Assembly (NCBI GenBank): GCA_026770705.1
Contig: JANJGN010000052.1
Location: forward strand, 930,001 to 994,000
Direction of reading: 5' to 3'
DNA from: Isurus oxyrinchus
Taxonomy: Eukaryota
DNA: 64,000 bases
The stretch's first letter is position 1. Each line of letters opens with the position of its first letter. This document shows, in pieces, positions 44,800 through 62,579 of the stretch. The notes beneath the pieces were generated by a model. That model saw only the letters and a program-made list of their open reading frames with translations, had not been told where the DNA came from and did no database searches. Position numbers and translations under genes: made by a program.

Positions 44800-45850
44800 T
44801 CATTTATGGGATATGGACGGAACTGGCGAGGCCAGAATTATTGCCCATCCCTAATAGCCCTTGAGAATATGGTAATGAGCTGCCTTCTTGAACTGTTGCA
44901 GTCTATGTGGTGTAGGTACACCCACAATGCTGTTAGGGAGGGTGTTCCAGGATTAGGACCCAGTGACTGTGAAGGAACGGCCGATATATTTCCAAGTCAG
45001 GATAGTGAGTGACTTGGAGGGTAACTTCCAGGTGGTGGTGTTACCATGTATCTGCTGCCCTGTAATTCGAGATGGTAGTGGTCGTGTGTTTGAAGGTGCT
45101 GCCTAAGGAGTTTTGGTGAGTTCCTGCAGTGCACCTTGTAGCTGGTACACACTGCTGCTACTGTGTGTCGGTTGTGCAGAGAGTGAATGTTTGTGGATGG
45201 GGAGCCGAACTAGTGGGGCTGCTTTGTCCTGAGTGGTGTTGAGTTTATTGAATCTTGTTGGAGCTGCACTCATCCAGGCAAGTGGAGAGTCTTCCATCAC
45301 ACTCCTGACCTGTGCCTTGAAGACGGTGGACAGGTTTTGGGGAGTCTGGAGTGAGTTACTCACTGCATGATTCCCAGCCTCTGACCTGCTCTTGTAGCCA
45401 CAGTATTTTTATGGCTAGTCCAGTACAATTTCTGGTCAATGGTAACCACCAGGATGTTGATAGTGGGGCATTCAGCAGTGGTAATGTCATTGAACATCAA
45501 GGAGCGATGGTTAGATTCTCTCTTATTGGAGATGGTCATTGCCTGACACTTGTCAGCCCAAGCCTGGATATTGTCCAGGTCTTGCTGCATTTGGACAAGG
45601 ACTGCTTCAGTATCTGAGGAGACGTGAATGGTGCTGAACATTGTGCAATCATCAGTGAACATCCACACTTCTGTCCTTATGATGGAAGGAAGGTCATTGA
45701 TGAAGCAGCTGAAGGTGGTTGGGTCTTGGACACTACCCTGAGTAACTCCTGCAGTGATGTCCTGGAACTGAGATGATTGACCTCCAACAACCACAACTAT
45801 CTTCCTTTGTGCTGGGTATGGCTCCAACCAGTGGAGAGTTTTCCCTCTGT
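44800..45850 (-). mobile_element. Non-LTR LINE RT 3' fragment
   Basis: GVTQGSVQDPTTFSCFINDL...MFTDDCT (PQGS/FADD-like motifs). Confidence 0.9.
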
Positions 45851-47090
45851 TATGATGTGGTAGATGATGTGTGCCGGGGGACCAAATCCACAAGGGAAAC
45901 TTGGTCACACTATCACAACAGTTTTGCGATTTGTATTTATTATGAGATGTGTGCACTGAATTCAGGAGTAATGTGTCAACCAAGACATTTAGAGATCTTA
46001 AAAATTAAATTTTAATATTTATTTAAGATTTAAAGCACACACATAAGGATACGGTTACTACTATAACAAATCCTAAACTTCCTAATTAACCTTGAAGATG
46101 GTGGACAGGCATTGGGAAGTCTGGAAGTGAGCAGTAAAACTCCTTTTAGGCAATAAACCAAAATAGATTTTAGATTTAAAAACAGAACCAGCAAGTTAAC
46201 ACAGAACACACTTGAGAGTGGATTTCCAAATGGCTTTCTCGAACGACAGTCGCTGAACATAACAGACCTATGGACAAATGCCTGGAGGCTTCTTCAAGGC
46301 TGATTCACACACTCTTGTTAGATTTTACATGATCCCCAACATAGCCTTTCATTCTCCTTTGTTGATGTTTCTCTCTCTTTGATATGTAAATTTCATTGTT
46401 CCATATGTCTTTGGAATGATACATTTCCCATAATATAAAAACTTTCATGTTGCCAATGTTGTCAATAACCTTTGGGAAAAATAAACACACTCCTTTGCCT
46501 TGCATATCGGCCTCGTTGTAAACAGACCAACAGCCCTTTGAAATCCAAACAATCCCTTCACTTACCTAAAAATTAAAATTCTCTTTCTCACCTCACATGC
46601 AAAGAAAGCCTCCATGTTCACTCATTAGCATTTCAAGTACATTTCTACACCTAGCTTCTTTTGATAATCTCAAACTTGCAGTCTACCTGACTCCAGGTGT
46701 AATTAAACCACACAGACAGACCCATCTACACTCACACCCATAAACCTAGTTTACAACAAACCAGGAAAATATTAAGCAAATTATTATACTTTCGTACCAC
46801 CCCTGATTCCCATTGACTCCAGTTTTACTCGGGATCCTAGATGCCACACTCGGTCAAATGCAGCCTTGATGTCAAAGGCAGTCACTCTCACCTCACCTTG
46901 TATTAACAGATGTTAAATTATACATAATTCATAAGCTTCTCACAATCTTTTACAGCATGGAAAAAGGTGCAGCATTCAGAAAGCTCACTCAGAACCAATA
47001 AAAAAAAGTTGAGCAACATCATATTTCTGTTCATTACTATTTGGCCATGTTGGCTGCACACACCCCACAGCCCCGCTCCCTGTTTCACAC

Positions 47091-47339
47091 TCAGTTTTTC
47101 TGGAACCTGATCTGTGCGTATTCCGTGTCCTCGCTCCTGTGCACAGTCCTGTCACCGCCGGGCAGCTTTGAAAAGTTGATGTTGGCGTAGAGAAGCTTGG
47201 CGGGATTGTCGGGGTTCCCATGTCCAACATCGCCTCCCACTGGACCTTCAGAGAGATCCCGGGGAGCTGGGGTCTCCCCCTCACTAGTTGTGTCTCTGGT
47301 TGTGTTCCGGGGCTCAGTAATCAGCACGTTCTGTTTACC
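47091..47339 (-). CDS. Locus S4 distal last exon with ITIM (LLYANI) and ITSM (TEYAQI)
   Basis: ctgtag acceptor; phase 0; open to TGA at 47091-47093. Confidence 0.88.
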   Translation of the reverse strand, partial: GKQNVLITEPRNTTRDTTSEGETPAPRDLSEGPVGGDVGHGNPDNPAKLLYANINFSKLPGGDRTVHRSEDTEYAQIRFQKN

Positions 47340-47830
47340 CTACAGAGAAATGGAAACAGAAGATATCCTCACATCAATTACTGGTACTGATAGGGTTAAA
47401 TTATTGTGCAGCCTCATTAGTGTCAGTCGTATCTCAGTGGGTTTAACCCTTTTTTTCACTCTCTTTCTCTGTCTCTCTCGCTTTCTCTCTCTCTTTATAA
47501 TTTAATCTCTATCACACTCCAACAGTGCAGCACTCCCTCAATACTGACCCTCTGACAGTGCAGCACTCCCTCAGTGCTGACCCTCCGACAATACAGCGCT
47601 CCCTCAGTACTGACCCTCTGTCAGTGCAGCACTCCCTCAGTACTGACCCTCCAACAGTGCAGCACTCCCTCAGTACTGACCCTCCAACAGTGCAGCACTC
47701 CCTCGGTAATGGCTCTGGTGAGTGATGGCTTGGAATCTGCACACAGGTGCCTGGTGTGAGGCTCAATAACATGAACCTTGTAATCAGAGAGAGGATGAGA
47801 GAGAGGGAGAGAGGAGGGACAGAGACAGAG

Positions 47831-48764
47831 TGTTATTAATCTATTAATGTTTGTATTATAAATGCAAACTGTCTTTTTAAACAGAGGTTTAGTCTGTGTG
47901 TGTGTCTGTGTGTATTTTAATTGGATTAAAGCCAGCCAGTCTGGGTGCTTTGATGTATAGTAGTTTTCAGATGTAAACAAAGAGGTAAAGTGGTAATTTG
48001 CATTTTTAAATAAAACATTAAATGCCTGAGAGTGAAATCTTAAACCAATCAACGTTTATATTACTAATAAAATTGATACGATGAAAGGGGATTTATTATT
48101 GGAAGAGATGGAGTTCAAAGGTCCTGATGATACATTGCGAATTTACCTTCAAACAGAAGCCATAAGACCATCAGATATAGGAGGAGAAATTAGACCATTC
48201 GGTCCATCGAGTCTGCTCCACCATTCATACATGGCTGATATGTTTCACAAACCCCATTCTCCCACCTTCTCTCCTAACCTTTGATCCCCTGACCAATCAA
48301 GAGCCCATCAATCTCCGTCTTCCTTACACTCAAGAGCTGGGTATAACTTGAGCAGTTTTGTGTGTGCAGAACAGAGGCTTGTAACATCAAAGCAGCTGTA
48401 AGCCTACACCTGTCTGCAAAGGAACCAAAGTGAAAGGAACCTCATTTGGAATTTGTGAGGTGAAAATGCTTTGCCTGGGTGTCTGCTTAAAGATAATGGG
48501 TTGTCTTAGAGGAGATTAGTTTGAGAATTTGTTAAAAATTTATGATGATACTAGTTTGTAGCCATGTGCATATGTTTAACTTGTGTAAATTAATATATGT
48601 CTCAAGTAGTTTGATATAAAACCATCTCAAGAACTGGTGGTCTTATTCCTGAATTTAGAGCTGCATCTCAAACATTCCACTGGGAAATATAGGTTATGAC
48701 AGTTGTTTAAAGTTTCCCTCTGGGATTTTAAACAACAGCCTTTACCAGTTTCTGTGTCATAATA
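47831..48764 (+). mobile_element. Solo LTR-like element (duplicate of 50929-51683) with a short CR1 insert
   Basis: High similarity to the 50929 copy; extra ~48160-48330 segment. Confidence 0.6.
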
Positions 48765-48899
48765 GAGAGACAGCATGATACTGAACCATTGCTGACTCCA
48801 CAGATACAAATCAGTGGGTAACTGGGCTGGGAATCTGGGACATGTGTTGTCTACACACTGAGATTGAAGCTTTGGAGTGAGTGTAAACAGCTCCTGTAC

Positions 48900-48981
48900 C
48901 TGGTGCTTCACACAGAGTGAACTGGGGGTCAATGCAATGTCTCTGGTCCCTGAAACTCTCTCCTCCATCGCTGTCTTTCTC
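48900..48981 (-). CDS. Locus S4 distal first cytoplasmic exon (RKTAMEERVSGTRDIALTPSSLCVKHQ)
   Basis: ttgcag/gtac; 82 nt, phase 2 to 0. Confidence 0.82.
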
Positions 48982-50169
48982 CTGCAATAACACAATATGA
49001 CACTGTGGTTATCATATAGCAGAGAGTCAGTGCAGCACAGACATAGAGCACACTGTAACCTTACACCAATGACTGGACTGTCTCTTTAAATCACTTCTGC
49101 ACAAAGCACAGAATCTAGAATCTTGACACCATCCAGGACAAAGCAGCCCGATTGATCTACAACCCATCCCCCACATTAAACATTCACTCCCTCCACCATG
49201 AACACACAGTGGCAGCAGTGTGTGTACCATCTACAAGATGCACTGCAGCAACTCAGCAAGGCTCCTTCAACAGCACCTTCCAAACCCACGAACTCTACCA
49301 TCTAGAAGGACAAGGGCAGCAGACACATGGGAACACCACCACCTGGAAGTTCCCCTCCAAGTCACTCACCATCCTGACTTGGAAATATATCACCGTTCCT
49401 TCATTGTCGCTGGGTCAAAATCCTGGAACTCCCTCTCTAACAGCACTGTGGGTGTACCTACACCACATGGACCGCAGCGGGTCAAGAAGGCAGCTCACCA
49501 CCACCTTCTCAAGGGCAATTAGGGATGGGCATTAATGCTGACATCACCAGTGACAGACACATTCGATGAAAGAATTAAAAATCTCACAGCTCAATGTATT
49601 TATTGTGACCCTGCTGCACACACTCCCTGTCGAAGGAGCCTTTGTGGTTCTATTGTTAATCGAAGCAGATCAGAGTTACTACAACCACTTGCATTTATAG
49701 CACCTTCAATGTAGCAAAATGTCCTAAGGCTCATCTGGGGATTGTTAGTGACATCTTCACCTGACTCTGAGGCACATGAGGAGATATTAGGGACAGGAGA
49801 CCAACAGCTGAGTCAACAAAGTCAGTTATTAACGGGCATCTTAAAGGAGGAGCTGGAGATAGGGAATGAGAGACAGACACAGAAAGAAAGACAGAGACAG
49901 GGAGAGAGAGAGAGAGAGAGAGGGAGAGAGCGAGAGAGAGAGGGAGAGAGAGAGAGAGAGAGAGAAAGACAGTGAATCTCTATCCCCAATGGCTCAGCAT
50001 CCAGTCCTCTCTGGAGAAGCATTTCATTCCAAACCACACCAACCGCAGCCCAATTCCATCCCTTCCTCCCTCTTTCCCCCTCTCCCCCAGTGGGTGTTTC
50101 CTGTTCCCAGGAATCTCAATCACTACCCCCCACCCCCATACCTCCTCACTCACTCTCCCCATTTCTCAT

Positions 50170-50418
50170 TCAGTTATGCTCGAACCTGATCTGTGCGTAT
50201 TCCGTCTCCACTTCCCTGTGGACAGACCCATCACCACTGGACATCCTCAAGACTTGGGGATTGGCGTAGAGAAACTCTTCAGGTTTGTCAGGGTTCCCAT
50301 GTCCAACATCGCCTCCCACTGCATCTTCAGAGAGACCCCGGAGAGCTGGGGTCTCCCCCTCGCCAGTTGCGTCTCTCTTTGTGTTCTGGGGCTCAGTAAT
50401 CAGCACGTTCTGTTTACC
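50170..50418 (-). CDS. Locus S4 proximal last exon with disrupted ITIM (FLYANP) and ITSM (TEYAQI)
   Basis: ctgtag acceptor; phase 0; open to TGA at 50170-50172. Confidence 0.88.
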   Translation of the reverse strand, partial: GKQNVLITEPQNTKRDATGEGETPALRGLSEDAVGGDVGHGNPDKPEEFLYANPQVLRMSSGDGSVHREVETEYAQIRFEHN

Positions 50419-50928
50419 CTACAGAGAAATCGAAACAGAAGTTATCCTCACATCATTTACTGGCACTGATAGGGTTAAATTATTGTGCAGCCTTGTTAAT
50501 GTCAGTCGTGTCTCAGTTGGTTTAACCCTCTCTCTCATGTCATATGAAAGATACCACCTATGGCAGTGCAACGCTCCCTCAGGACTGACCCTCCGACAGT
50601 GCAGCACTCCCTCAGTACTGACCCTCCGACAGTGCAGCGCTCCCTCATTACTGACCCTCCGACAGTGCAGCGCTCCCTCAGTACTGACACTCCGACAGTG
50701 CAGCTCGCCCTCAGTACTGACCCTCCGACAGTGCAACACTCCCTCAGTACTGACCCTCTGTCAGTCTTGCACTCCCTCGGTAATGGTTCTGGTGAGTGAC
50801 AGTTGGATTCTGCACTCAAGTGTCTGGTGTGAAGCTCATTAACATGCACCTTGTAATCAGAGAGAGGATGAGAGAGAGAGAAAGAGAGAGAGAGAGAAAG
50901 AAAGGGAGGTTGGGATAGAGAGAGAGAC

Positions 50929-51683
50929 TGTCATGATGCGATTAATAAATATCATGTTATTGGAAATTATTTTTATTCACATCGGGGTTTAGTCTGTGGG
51001 TGTGTCTGTGTGTGTTTTAATTGGATTAAAGCCAGCCAGTCTGGGTATTTGATGTATAGTAGTTTTGAGATGTAAACTGAGGCATAAAAATTTGTATTTT
51101 TAAACAGAGCATTCAAAACCTGAGAGTGAAATCTTAAACCAATCAACATTTATTTTATTGATAAAATTGATACTATGACAGAGGATTTATTGTTTGAAGG
51201 GATGGAGTTCAAAGGTCCTGATGATACAATTAGAATTTACATTCAAAGAGAAGAGCTGGGTATAACTTGAGCAGTTTTGTGTGTGCAGAGCAGAGGCTTG
51301 TAACATCAAAGCAGCTGTAAGCCTACACCTGTCTGCAAAGGAACCAAAGTGAAAGGAACCTCATTTGGAATTTGTGAGGTGAAAATGCTTTGCCTGGGTG
51401 TCTGCTTAAATTCTATGGGTTATCTTAGAGGAGATTAGTTTGGGAATTTGTTAAAAAGTTATGATAATACTAGTTTGTAGCCATGTGCATATGTTTAACT
51501 TGTGTTAATTAATAAATGGCTCATGTAGTTTGATATAAAACCATCTCGAGAACTGGTGGTCTTATTCCTGAATTTAGAGCTGCATCTCAAACATTCCACT
51601 GGGAAATATAGGTTATGACAGTTGTTTAAAGTTTCCCTCTGGGATTTTAAACAACAGCCTTTACCAGTTGCTGTGTCATAACA
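50929..51683 (+). mobile_element. Solo LTR-like element
   Basis: TGTCATG...CATAACA inverted termini and internal AATAAA; no clean TSD seen. Confidence 0.65.
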
Positions 51684-51818
51684 GAGAGACAGCATGATAC
51701 TGAAACATTGCTGACTCCACAGGTACAAATCAGTGGGTAACTGGGCTGGGAATCTGGGACACGTGTTGTCTACACACTGAGATTGAAGCTTTGGAGTGAG
51801 TGTAAACAGCTCCTGTAC

Positions 51819-51900
51819 CTGGTGCTTCACAGAGAGTGAACTGGGGCTCAATGCAATGTCACTGGTCCCTGAAACTCTCTCCTCCATCGCTGTCTTTCTC
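51819..51900 (-). CDS. Locus S4 proximal first cytoplasmic exon (RKTAMEERVSGTSDIALSPSSLSVKHQ)
   Basis: ttgcag/gtac; 82 nt, phase 2 to 0. Confidence 0.85.
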
Positions 51901-52622
51901 CTGCAATAACACAATATCACACTGTGGTTATCATATAGCAGAGAGTCAGTGCAGCACAGACACAGAGCCCACTGTTAGCTTACACCAACGACTGGACTGT
52001 CTCTTTAAATCACTTCTGCACAAAGCACAGAATCAAGAAGCTTGACACCATCCACAACAAAGCAGCTCGATTGATCAACACCCCATCCACCACATTAAAC
52101 ATTCACTCCCTCCACCACGAACACACAGTGGAAGCAGTGTGTGTACCATCTACAAGATGCACTGCAGCAACTCAGCAAGGCTCCTTCAACAGCACCTTCC
52201 AAACCCACGACCTCTACCATCTAGAAGGACAAGGGCAGCAGACACATGGGAACACCACCACCTGGAAGTTCCCCTCCAAGTCACTCACCATCCTGACTTG
52301 GAATTATATCACCGTTCCTTCACTGTCGCTGGGTCAAAATCCTGGAACTCCCTCTCTAACAACACTGTGGGTGTACCTACACCACATAGACTGTAGTGGG
52401 TCAAGAAGGCAGCTCACCACCTCTTTCTCAAGGGGCAATTGGGAATGGGCAATTAGTATTGTCCACGCCAATGACAGCCACATTCGATGAAAGAATTTAA
52501 AATCTCACAGCTTAGGAGGAAGCCACTCAGCCCATCGTGCCTGTGCTGGCCTTTTGTAAAAACTGTCCAATTAGTCCTAAGCAAATGTTTAGATTAAAAT
52601 CAAGTTAAATCTTCAGACTTAC

Positions 52623-52719
52623 TTTCTCACACAGATGAAGATGAAGATTCCAGCCAGGAAAACACTCAACATGATCCCAGCCGTGAACAATCCTACTGTC
52701 CATTTACTGGAGTCTCTAC
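52623..52719 (-). CDS. Locus S4 transmembrane exon (GRDSSKWTVGLFTAGIMLSVFLAGIFIFICVRK), uncharged
   Basis: ttacag/gtaag; 97 nt, phase 1 to 2. Confidence 0.9.
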
Positions 52720-53239
52720 CTGTAAAAACAGCCATTAATTACTGCACTACAGGTTTACAATGATGCTCCGATGTATCTCGAGAAGCGATACACTCACTCA
52801 ATGTTTAAATACTCATTCTCGGGCAATGCTGACATTTATTGTCCATCCCTAGTTTCCCCTTGAGAAGGTGGTGGGGGGTCTTCCTCCTGAACCACTGGTT
52901 TGTCCCAAACTGGAAGACCAGTTCAGAGGGCAGGTAAGAGTTAACCATGTTGGTGTCTGAGACTGGAGTCACATATACACCCAGACCTGTTAAAATGGAC
53001 AGGTTTCGCTCCCTTAAGATCATTAGTGACCCATATTATATATGTAATTTCTATATATATGTATCAACTACCCTCCCTAAAATAATCAATTATCACCTCA
53101 ATTTCACGCTGTTGTTTGTGGGATCTTGCTGTGCACAAATCAGCTGTTGCGTTTCCAACATGATAACAGTGAGCTCACTTCGAAACTGCTTTACTGGTTA
53201 TCAAGAGTTTTGGGAATTCCTAAGTATTTTATCAACGCA

Positions 53240-53660
53240 AGTCTTATATTTCGATTTAATCCATGTAACATTTATATATAATATTTATCAATGTGATCCC
53301 TATAGCATAAATTTATAATATTTATCAATATAATCTATGTAACATTTATATATAATTTTTATCCATTTAATTTCTGTAATATTTATATATAATGTTTCTC
53401 GATTTAATCCATGTAACATTTATATATAATATTTATCAATGTAACATATGTAACATTTATATATAATATTTATCCATTTAATCTGTGTAACATTTATATA
53501 TAATTTTTATCAACGTAATCTATGTAACATTTATATAAAATGTTTCTCGATGCAATCGATGTAACATTTATATATAATATTTATCAATGTAATCTATGTA
53601 ACATTTATATATAATGTTTCTCGATGTAATCTATGTAATGTTTATATATAATATTTAGTC
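53240..53660. repeat. AT-rich minisatellite, ~37-bp unit
   Basis: Tandem tgtaacatttatatataatatttatcaatgtaatcta. Confidence 0.9.
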
Positions 53661-54005
53661 GTTTGGGAGGAGAACCTGAGTATTGCTGAGAAAGGACATT
53701 TTGTCAAAGCTTTCTGTCTTGCACCCAATGAAGCAGCTTATCTGGGGGAGAGGGTTCCAGATTTCCACTCCCCTTTGTGTGAAGAAGTGTTTCCTGACAT
53801 CACCCCCTGAACGGCCTGGCTCCAATTTGACCAAGTGTTGCCATTGTCACATGAGGTCAGGTGATTCAAAGCTTGGTCAAAGGGTTATGTTGTAAACAGC
53901 ATCTTAGAGGAGGTAGAGAGAGAGGTGGAGTGGTTGAGGGAGGGAATTCTCGAGTTTAGGGATCAATCCAGCTGAGTGGAGATCGATCCTGAGCGAGTCT
54001 CTCAC

Positions 54006-54299
54006 CTTTGACCCACAGATACATCTTGAACATGGCTTCCCCATGTGGGTTTTGAACCGAGCAGGATGCAATCACTCCCCCCTCATCCTGGGGTCTCATC
54101 AGGGTGAGGAAACCAGTCACCAGATGCCCATCTCTGACCTGCCACGACACAAAACCTCCGTGTGTTTGGTTACCACTGATGTTCGCACTGGGCAGGTGCC
54201 AGGTGAGGTCTCCGGGTGGGTTGGAGGTGGCCACACAGACGCAGGTGACCCCCTCTGATCTCCGAGTGCACTCCGACTGCTGGGAAATCTCCGGCTTAT
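54006..54299 (-). CDS. Locus S4 membrane-proximal Ig exon, MAG domain-5-like
   Basis: 294 nt, phase 1-1; KPEISQQSECTRRSEGVTCVCVATSNPP...CSVQNPHG; the S-x-C...C-x-C...SNP pattern matches MAG and fish Siglecs. Confidence 0.9.
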
Positions 54300-54899
54300 C
54301 TGAGGAGGGAAGGACAACAATGAGACAACGTCATAGCAAAGTTAGAGCGTAAGATAGAATCTTCACACTGAAACACTCATTCCTGCCTTTGTTACCTCTG
54401 CACTCAACTATCCCAACACTCTCCTGCCCGACCTCCCATCTTCCACTCTCCGTAAACATCAGCTCATCCCAAACTCTGCTGTCCCCATGTCCTAACTCAC
54501 ACCGAGTCCCGTTCACACATCACTCCCTGTTGGTCACTGAGCTACACTGGCTCCCGGTCCGACAATACCACAATTTTAAAATTAACATCGTTTCAAATCC
54601 CTCCTTACTCCCTCCCTATCTCTGTAACCTCCTCCAGAACCTTCAACCCTCCCTATCTCTGTAACCTCATCCAGCCGCTTCAACCCTCTCTATCTCTGTA
54701 ACCTCCTCCAGCCCCTACAACCTTCCTTATCTCTGTAAACTCCTCCAGCCTCTACAACCCTCCGAGATCTCGATGCACCTCCAATTCCAGCCTCTTGACC
54801 TTCCCCCGATTCCTATCGCTCCACCATTGGCAGCCGTGCCTTCAGCTGCCTGGATCCTAACCTCTGGAATTCCCTCCCTCATTTCTCACCTCCTTCGGA

Positions 54900-55960: not shown

Positions 55961-56291
55961 CAGATGCTCAGAATCAGCTGGATGGACAGAAAGACCAATG
56001 AGTGGCTTAGATCAAGAGGAGACGTTCAGCAATTAAAAGGGTTGTTCAGGACAGTTAGAGATAGAAAGGTCGTCAAGTACAGAGATTTGAAACGAAGACC
56101 TGACAGCCTTGTCCTCACAACCATTGAAGGAGAAACTGAGAGCAAAAACAGAAAGGGAGAGGAAAAATTGGGTGTGTGGATAACGTGGACTGAGCGAGGA
56201 TTGAAGAAAACTGGATTAAAAACAACACGATCCCAATGGCTCCACGGAGACCACAGAGACAACAAACAAACAAATGTATCTCCACACTCAC

Positions 56292-56573
56292 GTTCCACAG
56301 TGATGGTTATGAACCCCTCCACTGCTCCATGTTCATTCTCTGCCACACACTGATAGTCTCCAGTGTCCCTGGATGTAACGTGAGGAATCACCAACCACAG
56401 CTCATTGTTGGAACTTGTTCTGTTCATTGGGACATTAAGATGTCGCCACGTCAGGTTAGAAGCTGGGAAGCTCTCGACAGAGCAGATTATCACTGCAGAA
56501 TTCCCCTCAATTATATTGATCGATGAAGCGTTAATCATATCAAGAGAAGTAATTGAGAGATTCTGTGGTGCAT
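56292..56573 (-). CDS. Locus S4 C2-set exon (domain 3)
   Basis: ttttag/gtgag; 282 nt; near-identical to 23626-23907. Confidence 0.92.
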
Positions 56574-57439
56574 CTAAAAATATATAAAGATTTTAATGTG
56601 AGCAAACACAGTGCACAGCAAAACTTCCTGTATCTTCTCGCTGTAACTGATGCCTGTGTGCATTTCTAGGCACCCTCTCTCAAGATAAGTTCCTATGTCA
56701 CATTTACAATGGGCACTGCCTATGTAAACTGTCACACTGCAGGAGCATTCTCCCACCAGAGACCCTGCCCATCCAGATTTAAAGAAACAGCCTTTCACAT
56801 CCTCAGAATGTCCCCAAGGGCTTGACAGGCAATGAATTATATTTGATCGATGGAGCACTGAGGGGTAAATCTACAATTCTCTGTTCAGGAGGTTGCTCAT
56901 CCAATTCAGGGTCTTGTTGATCTGGAGTTTACCTTCCTTCAGCACAGAATCGGAGCTGACACCGAGACTCCAGTGCAGCACTGAGAGAGGAGAGGGAACT
57001 CACATGTGTGTATGTGTGTGTGTGTGTTTGTGTTTCTGTACAAGTGAGTGTGTTTGTGTGTGTGTATGTGTGTGTGTGTGTGTTTGTGTTTCTGCACAAG
57101 TGATTNNNNNNNNNNNNNNNNNNNNNNNNNNNNNNNNNNNNNNNNNNNNNNNNNNNNNNNNNNNNNNNNNNNNNNNNNNNNNNNNNNNNNNNNNNNNNNN
57201 NNNNNNNNNNNNNNNNNNNNNNNNNNNNNNNNNNNNNNNNNNNNNNNNNNNNNNNNNATGTGCGTGCTTACGTGTGTGTGTGTGTGTGTGCATGTGTGTG
57301 TGCGTGTGTGTGTTGTGTGTGTGCACGTGTGCGTGTGAATGTGCGTGCTTACATGTGTGTGTGTGTCTGTTGGTGTGTGTCTGGTCTGTGTAACCTGTAA
57401 ACCTAACCCTTCCACACTGATGGTCACAAACATCCCCCA

Positions 57440-60620: not shown

Positions 60621-60990
60621 CTAGGTATCTATAGAACTATCTCTCTCCGTGTTCTATTCTCATGTGACCTTGAGTAATTAATGATAAATACTATCTATTT
60701 ACATTTTTAATATTAAACTTTTATACTACATCTCCCCCAAAATCTTTGACATCAATGAAGACAATATTTATATTATCCTATATTGTCTTTTAAGTTCAAC
60801 CTTGGCCCCCTCTGCCTTATCAGGTAGGCATAAACAATCCCAAGGCTTAATACAGGAAGAGCTCTCCCTGGTCAATATCACTAATAAAAAAGGACCTGTT
60901 TTGTCTTCAACCCAGTGATGTTTGTGGGATCTTGCTCTGCACATTGTATCCTATTACAGCTAATATAGAATCAAGGGTGTCAGTACTTAC

Positions 60991-61287
60991 CTTGTACAGT
61001 TAGTACAAGGGTCCGCTCCGATGAAACAGATGGATATCTCACTCTGCAGCAGAGAGTGTGTCCGTGGTGTTTGAGTGATGGGGTCAGGGTCAGAACAGAA
61101 GTATAGGTCAGAGTGACACCATGCTGAGTTACAGTGTTTGAGACTGATCCAGGTACGTCAGTGGGAGTGTCCCAGGTTAAGACAGGTGCAGCTGTTCCAT
61201 TGCACGTTGTGTTGAAGGTGCAGCTTACATCCACACGCTTTCCTGCAATAATTTCAGCAGGGAATATCGTGGGTTTATCTGTGAAAT
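60991..61287 (-). CDS. Locus S4 C2-set exon (domain 2)
   Basis: gttag/gtaag; 297 nt; DFTDKPTIFP...VSCTFNTTCNG...LTW...SVLTLTPSLKHHGHTLCC. Confidence 0.92.
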
Positions 61288-62145
61288 CTAACAGACAGAG
61301 AATGGATCCTTTTAGAGAAATATAATGTGAAGCATCAGTTCAAATAGAAACCACAGTCCCACAAGAGAAAGCACTTTTACAAGGATGATATGAGAACTGA
61401 GAGGTTACAATGATCAGGAAAGATTTTCTTGCTCTTTGGCAGTAGTGTTTCTGTCTCTCAGCTTAATACACGTTCACTCCGAGACATGTGAATTGAGAAC
61501 ACTGGATGAGAGAAGAGGCTGAGACCAGAGATTGGAGTTAAAAGCAGAATACTGCGGATGCTGGAAATCTGAAACAAAAACAAAAATTGCTGGAAAGACT
61601 CAGCAGGTCTGACAGTATCAGTGGAGAGGAAGACAGGGTTAACGTTTCGAGTCCGTATGACTCTTCATCAGACCAGAGGTTTGAGTTCACTGGCTTCTCA
61701 TTTCCTCAGTGATCTAGGTGATTTAGCACCTTGTGGTTTGTTGGATCTTGCTGTGCACAAACTGCCTGCTGTGTTTTACATCTGTGACTACAATTCAGGA
61801 ATAATTTCATTGGCTGTGAATGGATTTGGATCCTCCTGAGGTGGTAAATTGCGCTGCAGAAATGCACATCTTTCTTTTATCGATACGTCAGACTTTTAAA
61901 CAGGACAGGAGAGATTGATGGGAGTGGTAACCTGATAATACAGTTAATGCTTTTCATCATTGATATTAAAGTGAGTATTAGACGTTGCTTTAGGACTGAA
62001 CTGGAAGCTATCACCAGGTTATTGAGAATCAGACAGTGTGTTATAATAAGCTGTGTTTTGTGTTAATATGTAAATGTCACAGTTTGTGTTATTTCCCATT
62101 GAGTGTTGAATGTGAATTGTTGAGTAATTATAACACAGCACTTAC

Positions 62146-62514
62146 CAGAAACGTGAAGCTGGGTTACAGGATAGTAGTTGTAACTATTACTGCTGTCAAA
62201 TTCTATTCTGAAAAAATAAGGTCCTGCATCTTCCCGTCTGATGTTCTTTATAATCAGGGAACAGTCGCCATCTTTCAGGTCTCCAGACAGCCGGGTCCGA
62301 TGGCGGAACCGTGGTAACTCGTGACTGTGATCCTTGGAGTGAAAGGCAATAGGAGCCCAGGGAATCTGTTTCTCATTATTAAACCAGACTCCACCTCGCG
62401 GTTGGTTTTCCAGACACGATGGATAACTGTAATGACAAGGAATCTGTACACACGAACCTTCCTGCGCTGTCACCTCTCGTGGAGTGTCACCTTTCCACTC
62501 TTGTGAGGGTTCAA
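62146..62514 (-). CDS. Locus S4 Siglec V-set exon with essential Arg (YFFRIE); leader not found in window
   Basis: ccccag/gtaag; 369 nt, phase 1-1, open. Confidence 0.94.
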
Positions 62515-62579
62515 CTGGGGAGAGAAATCTCAATATTTAACTCTGGATGGTTTGTGGATCCACTAGACTCAACTTTACA

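What the first reader, a model, noticed from the sequence alone, without database searches (positions are those of the whole stretch)
47091..52719. One TM exon followed by two tandem two-exon tails: a possible splice-selectable ITIM switch
A ~3-kb duplication copies both cytoplasmic exons, but similarity ends at ~49590/52510, about 110 bp short of the TM, so only one TM exists. Both cassettes are open with intact splice sites and the same phases. The proximal tail has FLYANP (ITIM +3 residue is Pro) plus TEYAQI. The distal tail has LLYANI plus TEYAQI. Substitutions concentrate between the two Tyr. Inference: alternative last exons yield ITSM-only vs ITIM+ITSM isoforms of one sialic-acid-binding receptor.
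Basis: partly seen in the sequence, partly recalled or inferred. Interest (0 to 1): 0.8.

Follow-up and report, generated by a model that had tools for sequence, protein, structure and literature searches.

The report
Shark Siglec gene, doubled signalling tail
A shark immune-receptor gene of the Siglec type carries its two-exon inner signalling tail twice in a row, and gene models of a close relative suggest that the first copy is spliced in series with the second or skipped, which differs from the proposed choice between two alternative gene ends.

Summary
On the minus strand, one TM exon (52719-52623) is followed by two open, phase-matched two-exon tail cassettes. Cassette A is 51900-51819 plus 50418-50170, with FLYANP and TEYAQI. 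Cassette B is 48981-48900 plus 47339-47091, with LLYANI and TEYAQI. They lie in a duplication (52512-50155 vs 49591-47076) that stops 110 nt short of the TM exon.

It is not an assembly artefact. The same layout, an A-type unit followed by a B-type unit, occurs in NCBI gene models of great white shark, and doubled A+A tails occur there and in basking shark. Window A2 groups with their first units (100/98).

It has the same phase as the TM donor, so A1+A2' (315 nt) is an in-frame module. Twelve lamniform models join the tails in series there. One great white gene has isoforms for serial inclusion, TM-to-B1, A1-to-B2, and an A-only frameshift form. No isoform ends at A2's own stop.

The scan had already found this layout at two other loci of this genome (s1-865407, s1-865411). 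No paper describing it was found.

The parts
62144..62545 (-). V-set exon of the Siglec-like gene, with the sialic-acid-binding-type arginine in FFRIE
   Evidence: ORF list. Pfam V-set 1.5e-12 and Ig_CD22 3.3e-09. PDB Siglec-5/8/7/CD33 at E about 1e-15, with YFFRIE aligned to YFFRVE. tblastn with P0066. Limits approximate.
60986..61300 (-). First C2-set exon
   Evidence: Pfam C2-set_2 6e-08. 93% identical to Carcharodon P0029/P0020. Limits approximate.
56263..56577 (-). Second Ig (I/C2-set) exon
   Evidence: Pfam Ig_3/I-set. 88-90% identical to P0029/P0066. Limits approximate.
54001..54318 (-). Membrane-proximal Ig exon
   Evidence: tblastn 91-94% to P0029/P0066/P0020. No Pfam hit for the 80-aa piece tested. 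Limits approximate.
52623..52719 (-). The single transmembrane exon (97 nt). It has no charged residue in the membrane span. Its donor AAA|gtaagt leaves 2 nt.
   Evidence: Translation and phase. Splice contexts. 88-97% identical to Carcharodon models.
50155..52512 (-). Copy 1 of the duplicated segment (intron part, A1, intron, A2, and about 15 nt beyond the stop)
   Evidence: blastn. Global alignment and identity profile.
51819..51900 (-). Exon A1 (82 nt), first cytoplasmic exon of cassette A
   Evidence: 79/82 nt identical to B1.
50170..50418 (-). Exon A2 (249 nt with stop): FLYANP and TEYAQI. It contains an internal 5' splice site CAG|gttcga; the last exon base is 50186, so A2' = 50418-50186 = 233 nt.
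   Evidence: Internal donor context and in-frame serial product. The junction ...TEYAQI-R-(R/K)K... occurs in 12 lamniform models.
49592..50154 (-). Spacer between the copies. It would be the 3' UTR of A2 if A2 is terminal, or intron in the serial form. It has no counterpart after B2.
49599..49604 (-). The only AATAAA after A2's stop (565 nt downstream), 8 nt before the start of copy 2
   Evidence: Regex scan. This is a consensus match only; its use was not tested.
47076..49591 (-). Copy 2 of the duplicated segment, with a 175-nt insertion at 48334-48160 where identity falls from about 96% to about 83%
48900..48981 (-). Exon B1 (82 nt)
47091..47339 (-). Exon B2 (249 nt with stop): LLYANI (canonical ITIM) and TEYAQI (ITSM-type). 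C-terminus RFQKN as in other B-type tails.
   Evidence: 88-89% identical to the second units of Carcharodon P0029/P0066.

Best explanation
This is the 3' end of an inhibitory-type Siglec-like receptor gene of a lamniform shark. Its two-exon cytoplasmic tail was duplicated in tandem before this species split from the great white shark lineage.

The first cassette works as an in-frame, skippable module, not as a separate gene end. Exon A2 contains a 5' splice site (CAG|GTTCGA) 12 nt before its stop codon. This donor leaves 2 nt, exactly as the TM exon donor does. So A1+A2' (82+233 = 315 nt, 105 codons) can be spliced onto B1 or left out without changing the frame.

Expected products:
- Serial tail with four tyrosine motifs: FLYANP, TEYAQI, LLYANI, TEYAQI.
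- B-only tail with the canonical ITIM plus the ITSM-type motif, by TM-to-B1 or A1-to-B2 splicing.
- A-only tail without a canonical ITIM, probably minor, by A2'-to-B2 frameshift or by polyadenylation after A2.

Splicing would thus set the number and kind of SH2 docking sites on one sialic-acid-sensing ectodomain.

What is shown: the anatomy, the frames, the conservation, and the annotated isoforms in a relative.
What is inferred: that the same splicing occurs in this species, and all of the signalling consequences. LLYANI would recruit SHP-1/2-type phosphatases. Y-A-N sites would bind Grb2-type SH2 domains, as the YEND site of CD22 does.
For: Anatomy and frames:
-. All six exon combinations were translated locally. 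Serial, TM-B1-B2 and A1-B2 are in frame to B2's stop. A2'-B2 ends 6 codons after the junction.

Relatives, from the HMMER search of tail exon 2 and two word searches:
- Relatives occur only in sharks and are named Siglec or CD33-like by NCBI.
- Twelve models from Carcharodon and Cetorhinus carry two tails joined at ...TEYAQI-R-(R/K)K....
- One Carcharodon gene (XP_041037215-221) has the same A-type then B-type order. Its isoforms are serial (X1, X2, X6), TM-B1-B2 (X4), A1-B2 (X5) and A2'-B2 (X3).
- That gene and P0029 are colinear with the window at 88-97% identity per exon.

Tree of the 77-aa units:
- Window A2 groups with the first units of P0017/P0029/P0030 (100/98).
- A-type units form a clade (100/99) nested among B-type units.
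- The two tails are therefore old, distinct types.

Constraint:
- The A2/B2 exon flanks differ at 16 of 174 sites. The adjacent intron differs at 135 of 800 sites (Fisher p = 0.011).
- The motifs LYAN and TEYAQIRF are invariant.
Against: - No RNA evidence from this genome. Read laying laid nothing.
- The relative's isoforms are automatic NCBI predictions.
- The internal donor is weak on its face. It departs from the consensus at +3, +4 and +6. It is also a by-product of the conserved Arg-Phe codons present in single-tail genes.
- Pairwise dN/dS between A2 and B2 is about 1 (0.97). Protein-level constraint on both copies is therefore not demonstrated by that measure.
- The window gene is a co-orthologue of the Carcharodon gene with isoforms X1-X6, not necessarily its strict orthologue.
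Confidence: 0.6

Rival explanations
1. Two mutually exclusive alternative last-exon cassettes each end at their own stop and poly(A) site. They give an A-only (ITSM-only) isoform or a B-only (ITIM+ITSM) isoform.
For: - A2 has its own stop, and the only AATAAA downstream (49604-49599) is followed by a U/GU-rich stretch.
- B-only isoforms by both proposed junctions exist in the relative's annotation: P0067 and P0062.
Against: - No annotated isoform in the relative ends at A2's own stop.
- Twelve models use A2 as an internal exon.
- The post-donor codons of A2 (RFEHN) depart from the A-type consensus RFKRN. B2 keeps RFQKN exactly. This fits relaxed constraint on A2's last codons.
Confidence: 0.2
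2. Only one cassette is used in this species. The other is a silent relic of the duplication, still open by chance.
For: - dN/dS between A2 and B2 is about 1.
- Scan note s1-865411 reports another doubled-tail locus of this genome where one copy carries a stop (not checked here).
- No expression data exist for this locus.
Against: - Both cassettes keep open frames, all splice sites and both Tyr motifs.
- Both are about 88-90% identical to their counterparts in Carcharodon, like the Ig exons of the same gene.
- The exon flanks are more conserved than the intron (p = 0.011).
Confidence: 0.15
3. False duplication: two alleles or haplotypes assembled in tandem.
For: The first 1.26 kb of the copies is about 95% identical.
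Against: - The copies are of two different, phylogenetically old tail types.
- The type core is only 64% identical.
- Copy 2 starts inside an intron, without a TM exon and next to a unique spacer.
- The same A-then-B order is present in several independent Carcharodon models, and A+A doubles occur in Cetorhinus.
Confidence: 0.02

Closest known systems
NCBI gene models of Carcharodon carcharias 'myelin-associated glycoprotein-like' isoforms X1-X6 (XP_041037215-221) and 'sialic acid-binding Ig-like lectin 10' (XP_041037239)
   Same: Same exon order, same A-type then B-type doubled tail and same junction residue (R) at the internal donor. Identity is 88-97% per exon.
   Different: They come from another species or paralogue. 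These models carry an extra Ig exon that is absent from the window. They are predictions, not studied proteins.
CD33-related Siglecs of mammals (CD33, Siglec-5/7/8/9/10)
   Same: The V-set domain has the conserved arginine, and these are the best PDB matches. The tail has a membrane-proximal ITIM and a distal TEY-type motif. The similarity of the tail motifs to mammalian tails is from my own knowledge and was not tested here.
   Different: Orthology to the mammalian CD33-related group was not established. The tail is doubled. The first copy has Pro at ITIM +3.
CD22 (Siglec-2) tail with several ITIMs and a Grb2-binding YEND site
   Same: The serial form would be a multi-tyrosine Siglec tail mixing ITIMs with a Y-x-N site. 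In CD22, the Y4/YEND site recruits Grb2 independently of the ITIMs (PMC5302901).
   Different: In CD22 all tyrosines sit in one constitutive tail. Here the number of motifs would be set by including or skipping a duplicated exon pair.
Splice isoforms that add or remove an ITIM-type tail, e.g. NKp44-1 vs NKp44-2/3
   Same: Alternative splicing gives one receptor tails with or without an ITIM-like motif (PMC13072323).
   Different: NKp44 has no tandem duplicated, phase-matched cassette and no serial inclusion.
Composite terminal exon with an internal donor competing with a proximal poly(A) site (immunoglobulin mu secreted/membrane choice; from my own knowledge)
   Same: A2 has both its own stop with an AATAAA downstream and an internal donor leading to further exons.
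   Different: Use of the proximal poly(A) site is unproven here. The outcome would be a change in tail length, not a secreted-versus-membrane change.

Membership tests
Siglec (sialic acid-binding Ig-like lectin) family | N-terminal V-set Ig domain of the Siglec type | tested here: met
   Pfam V-set 1.5e-12 and Ig_CD22 3.3e-09. The top 17 PDB matches are all Siglecs (Siglec-5/8/7/10, CD33, MAG, sialoadhesin) at E 1e-15 to 1e-13.
Siglec (sialic acid-binding Ig-like lectin) family | Conserved arginine on strand F that binds the sialic acid carboxylate | tested here: met
   YFFRIE of the window aligns with YFFRVE of Siglec-5 (alignment).
Siglec (sialic acid-binding Ig-like lectin) family | Actual binding of sialylated glycans | not testable with these tools
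   Needs glycan-binding assays.
Inhibitory ITIM/ITSM receptor tail | ITIM consensus [SIVL]-x-Y-x-x-[IVL] | tested here: met
   Cassette B: L-L-Y-A-N-I. Cassette A fails it: F-L-Y-A-N-P has Phe at -2 and Pro at +3.
Inhibitory ITIM/ITSM receptor tail | ITSM-type motif T-x-Y-x-x-[VI] | tested here: met
   T-E-Y-A-Q-I in both cassettes, with no nucleotide change across codons 72-79.
Inhibitory ITIM/ITSM receptor tail | Phosphorylation-dependent recruitment of SHP-1/SHP-2 (or SAP) | not testable with these tools
   Needs phosphopeptide or cell assays.
   AATAAA lies 565 nt after A2's stop. After B2 there are AGTAAA at 261 nt and AATAAA at 1067 and 1149 nt. No isoform of the annotated relative ends at A2's stop. 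Usage in this genome was not testable.
In-frame cassette (skippable or serial module) | Module length divisible by 3, with entry and exit phases matching the flanking exons | tested here: met
   A1+A2' = 82+233 = 315 nt. The TM donor and the A2 internal donor both leave 2 nt. Serial and skipped forms all read through to B2's stop.
In-frame cassette (skippable or serial module) | Transcripts with and without the module | tested here: inconclusive
   Both are present as annotated isoforms X1/X2/X6 versus X4/X5 of a Carcharodon gene. There is no RNA evidence for this genome.

The most novel reading that the evidence does not exclude
Lamniform sharks have turned the Siglec inhibitory tail into a phase-matched, repeatable exon-pair module. 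Each copy ends in a donor compatible with the next copy's first exon. Tandem amplification plus splicing can then set the number of tyrosine docking sites at two or four. They can also set whether a canonical ITIM is present on one ligand-binding ectodomain. This would be a splice-controlled gain control for an inhibitory receptor, not described in print.
Probability: 0.35. Interest if true: 0.6.

Novelty: new variant of a known kind. Interest (0 to 1): 0.4.

Why it matters
Inhibitory and activating Siglecs set thresholds for innate and B-cell responses in mammals. How far back such tuning goes is poorly documented. I found no paper on shark Siglec tails.

A duplicated, phase-matched tail module used in series or skipped would be a compact way to vary inhibitory strength without changing ligand specificity. 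It would also give an evolutionary route from two-tyrosine CD33-type tails to many-tyrosine CD22-type tails.

The practical value is limited. Automatic annotation of two other lamniform sharks already predicts these forms. This scan has met the same layout at two other loci of this genome.

Tried and rejected
There is therefore no RNA or read-depth evidence. One later local regex scan for poly(A) signals read through that stretch inside a script only.
The Carcharodon and Cetorhinus loci and their transcript support could not be inspected.
- A word search with the aligned 82-aa tail exons found nothing in the 45-143 aa range.
Joined exons were only translated locally to check frames.
- I first favoured 'B is a relic of a partial gene duplication' and rejected it.
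- I rejected haplotype mis-assembly on the tree and the cross-species evidence.
- Whole-exon dN/dS (0.97) proved uninformative. The exon is a mosaic of well-kept flanks and a type-specific core.
- Paper searches for shark or cartilaginous-fish Siglecs returned nothing relevant.
Full report
**Observation**

The gene lies on the minus strand. Its Siglec-type exons are:
- V-set exon, about 62545-62144.
- Three further Ig exons, about 61300-60986, 56577-56263 and 54318-54001.
- One TM exon, 52719-52623.

The V exon matches Pfam V-set and Ig_CD22. Its best solved relatives are Siglec-5, -8, -7, CD33, Siglec-10, MAG and sialoadhesin at E 1e-15 to 1e-13. The window's YFFRIE aligns on Siglec-5's YFFRVE, which is the sialic-acid arginine.

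Two cassettes follow the TM exon:
- Cassette A: A1 51900-51819 and A2 50418-50170.
- Cassette B: B1 48981-48900 and B2 47339-47091.

Lengths are 97, 82, 249, 82 and 249 nt. The TM exon leaves two bases, the 82-nt exons take one, and the last exons start in phase 0. Both cassettes are open. Acceptors and donors are intact and nearly identical. A carries FLYANP and TEYAQI. B carries LLYANI and TEYAQI. No other copy of these exons is in the window.

**The duplication**

blastn and a global alignment give this identity profile:
- 52512-51252 vs 49591-48332: 94-97%. Exon A1/B1 is 79/82.
- A 175-nt insertion in copy 2 (48334-48160) marks the break.
- 51251-50419: 82-84%.
- Inside exon 2: 90.6% for codons 1-46, 64% for codons 47-71, and 91.7% for codons 72 to the stop.

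Similarity ends about 15 nt after both stops. The 18 bases upstream of 52512 do not match. The 563-nt spacer 50154-49592 has no counterpart after B2.

The sharp step from about 96% to about 83% at an indel suggests a recombinant origin. The upstream half of copy 2 looks like a close copy of A. The downstream half seems to come from a B-type tail, or else gene conversion was limited to the upstream half. This is inference.

**Relatives**

I searched the spliced model exon by exon and left out the step of searching with the joined model.
- A word search with the two aligned 82-aa tail exons found nothing among proteins of 45-143 aa.
- The HMMER search of representatives found 12 proteins, all shark Siglec-like models.
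- Word searches with the tails of two database proteins added more. Cluster look-ups gave names and accessions.

Species represented are Carcharodon carcharias, Cetorhinus maximus, Stegostoma, Hemiscyllium, Rhincodon, Scyliorhinus, Mustelus and Pristiophorus. Proteins from outside the Lamniformes cover only about half of a doubled-tail query, meaning they have one tail.

**The missed donor**

Twelve Carcharodon and Cetorhinus models contain two tails in series, joined at ...TEYAQI-R-(R/K)K.... In the window this corresponds to CAG|GTTCGA inside A2, with the last exon base at 50186, 12 nt before the stop. It leaves AG, which the first G of B1 completes to Arg. This is the same phase as the TM donor. 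A1+A2' is 315 nt, so it is an in-frame module.

I translated the combinations locally:
- Serial: four Tyr motifs, ending at B2's stop.
- TM-B1-B2 and A1-B2: LLYANI plus TEYAQI.
- A2'-B2: stops six codons after the junction, giving an A-only tail.
- A1-B1-B2: out of frame.

**Isoforms in a relative**

One great white shark gene (XP_041037215-221) has the same A-type first unit and B-type second unit. Its isoforms are:
- X1, X2, X6: serial.
- X4: TM to B1.
- X5: A1 to B2.
- X3: A2' to B2.

No isoform ends at A2's own stop. This gene and XP_041037239 are colinear with the window at 88-97% identity per exon. They have one extra Ig exon that the window lacks.

NCBI's pipeline normally reports alternative isoforms on transcript evidence. 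That statement is from my own knowledge.

**History and constraint**

A tree of the 77-aa tail units shows:
- A-type units (Y-A-N-P ... RFKRN) form a clade (100/99).
- That clade is nested among B-type units (Y-A-N-I-N-F-S-K-L-P ... RFQKN).
- B-type units are the only kind found in other shark orders.
- Window A2 groups with the first units of three Carcharodon models (100/98).

The low identity of codons 47-71 therefore reflects two old tail types, not decay. FLYANP belongs to a conserved variant.

Whole-exon dN/dS is 0.97 and is uninformative for such a mosaic. The exon flanks differ less than the adjacent intron: 16/174 against 135/800, p = 0.011. Both units are about 88-90% identical to their Carcharodon counterparts, like the Ig exons. 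B2 keeps the B-type C-terminus exactly. A2's post-donor codons (RFEHN) depart from RFKRN. That fits A2's last codons being mostly intronic.

**Mechanism**

The best-supported reading is a skippable or serial tail module followed by a constitutive terminal B cassette. The poly(A) route after A2 is possible but unproven: AATAAA lies at 49604-49599, 8 nt before copy 2.

The signalling consequences are inferred. LLYANI plus TEYAQI would recruit phosphatases as in other ITIM receptors. Y-A-N sites fit the Grb2-type Y-x-N site known from CD22 (PMC5302901). Splice isoforms that add an ITIM-type tail are known, for example NKp44-1 (PMC13072323).

**Limits**

Those places were sent to no search tool afterwards.
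I redid the analysis from coordinates.
- Scan notes s1-865407 and s1-865411 describe the same doubled-tail layout at other loci of this genome.

**Verdict**

The feature is real and conserved. It is a new variant of a known kind, already predicted by automatic annotation and not found in print.

Noticed in passing
window 54234-53956 (minus): Reading through the donor of the membrane-proximal Ig exon gives ...VKGERLAQDRSPLSWIDP and then a stop. This is almost the same extension as Carcharodon model P0036 (...VKGERLAQDRSPLSWIDH). It may be a conserved soluble isoform made by intron retention.
   Followed up: partly
window 56263-54318 (minus): The extra Ig exon of Carcharodon P0066/P0029 (about residues 375-457 of P0066) has no counterpart between the second and the membrane-proximal Ig exons of the window gene. 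Only about 29% hits appear elsewhere in the window.
   Followed up: partly
window 50865-50560, 47725-47517 and 53171-53731: There are 33-nt tandem repeats inside the cassette introns of both copies, and 37-nt tandem repeats in the intron upstream of the TM exon.
   Followed up: no
window about 46900-45200 (minus): A fragment resembling a LINE reverse transcriptase lies downstream of B2, inside what would be its long 3' UTR if the AATAAA at 46023 or 45941 is used.
   Followed up: no
window 52293-52097 and 45000-45192: The first 400 nt of each duplicated copy look like an interspersed repeat. Another copy lies inverted at 45000-45192 at 85% identity. The upstream duplication boundary may coincide with the end of a transposable element.
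   Followed up: no
Cetorhinus proteins P0002 and P0021: Two basking shark models with quite different ectodomains share an identical TM and B-type tail sequence. They are either read-through models sharing terminal exons or very recent duplicates.
   Followed up: no
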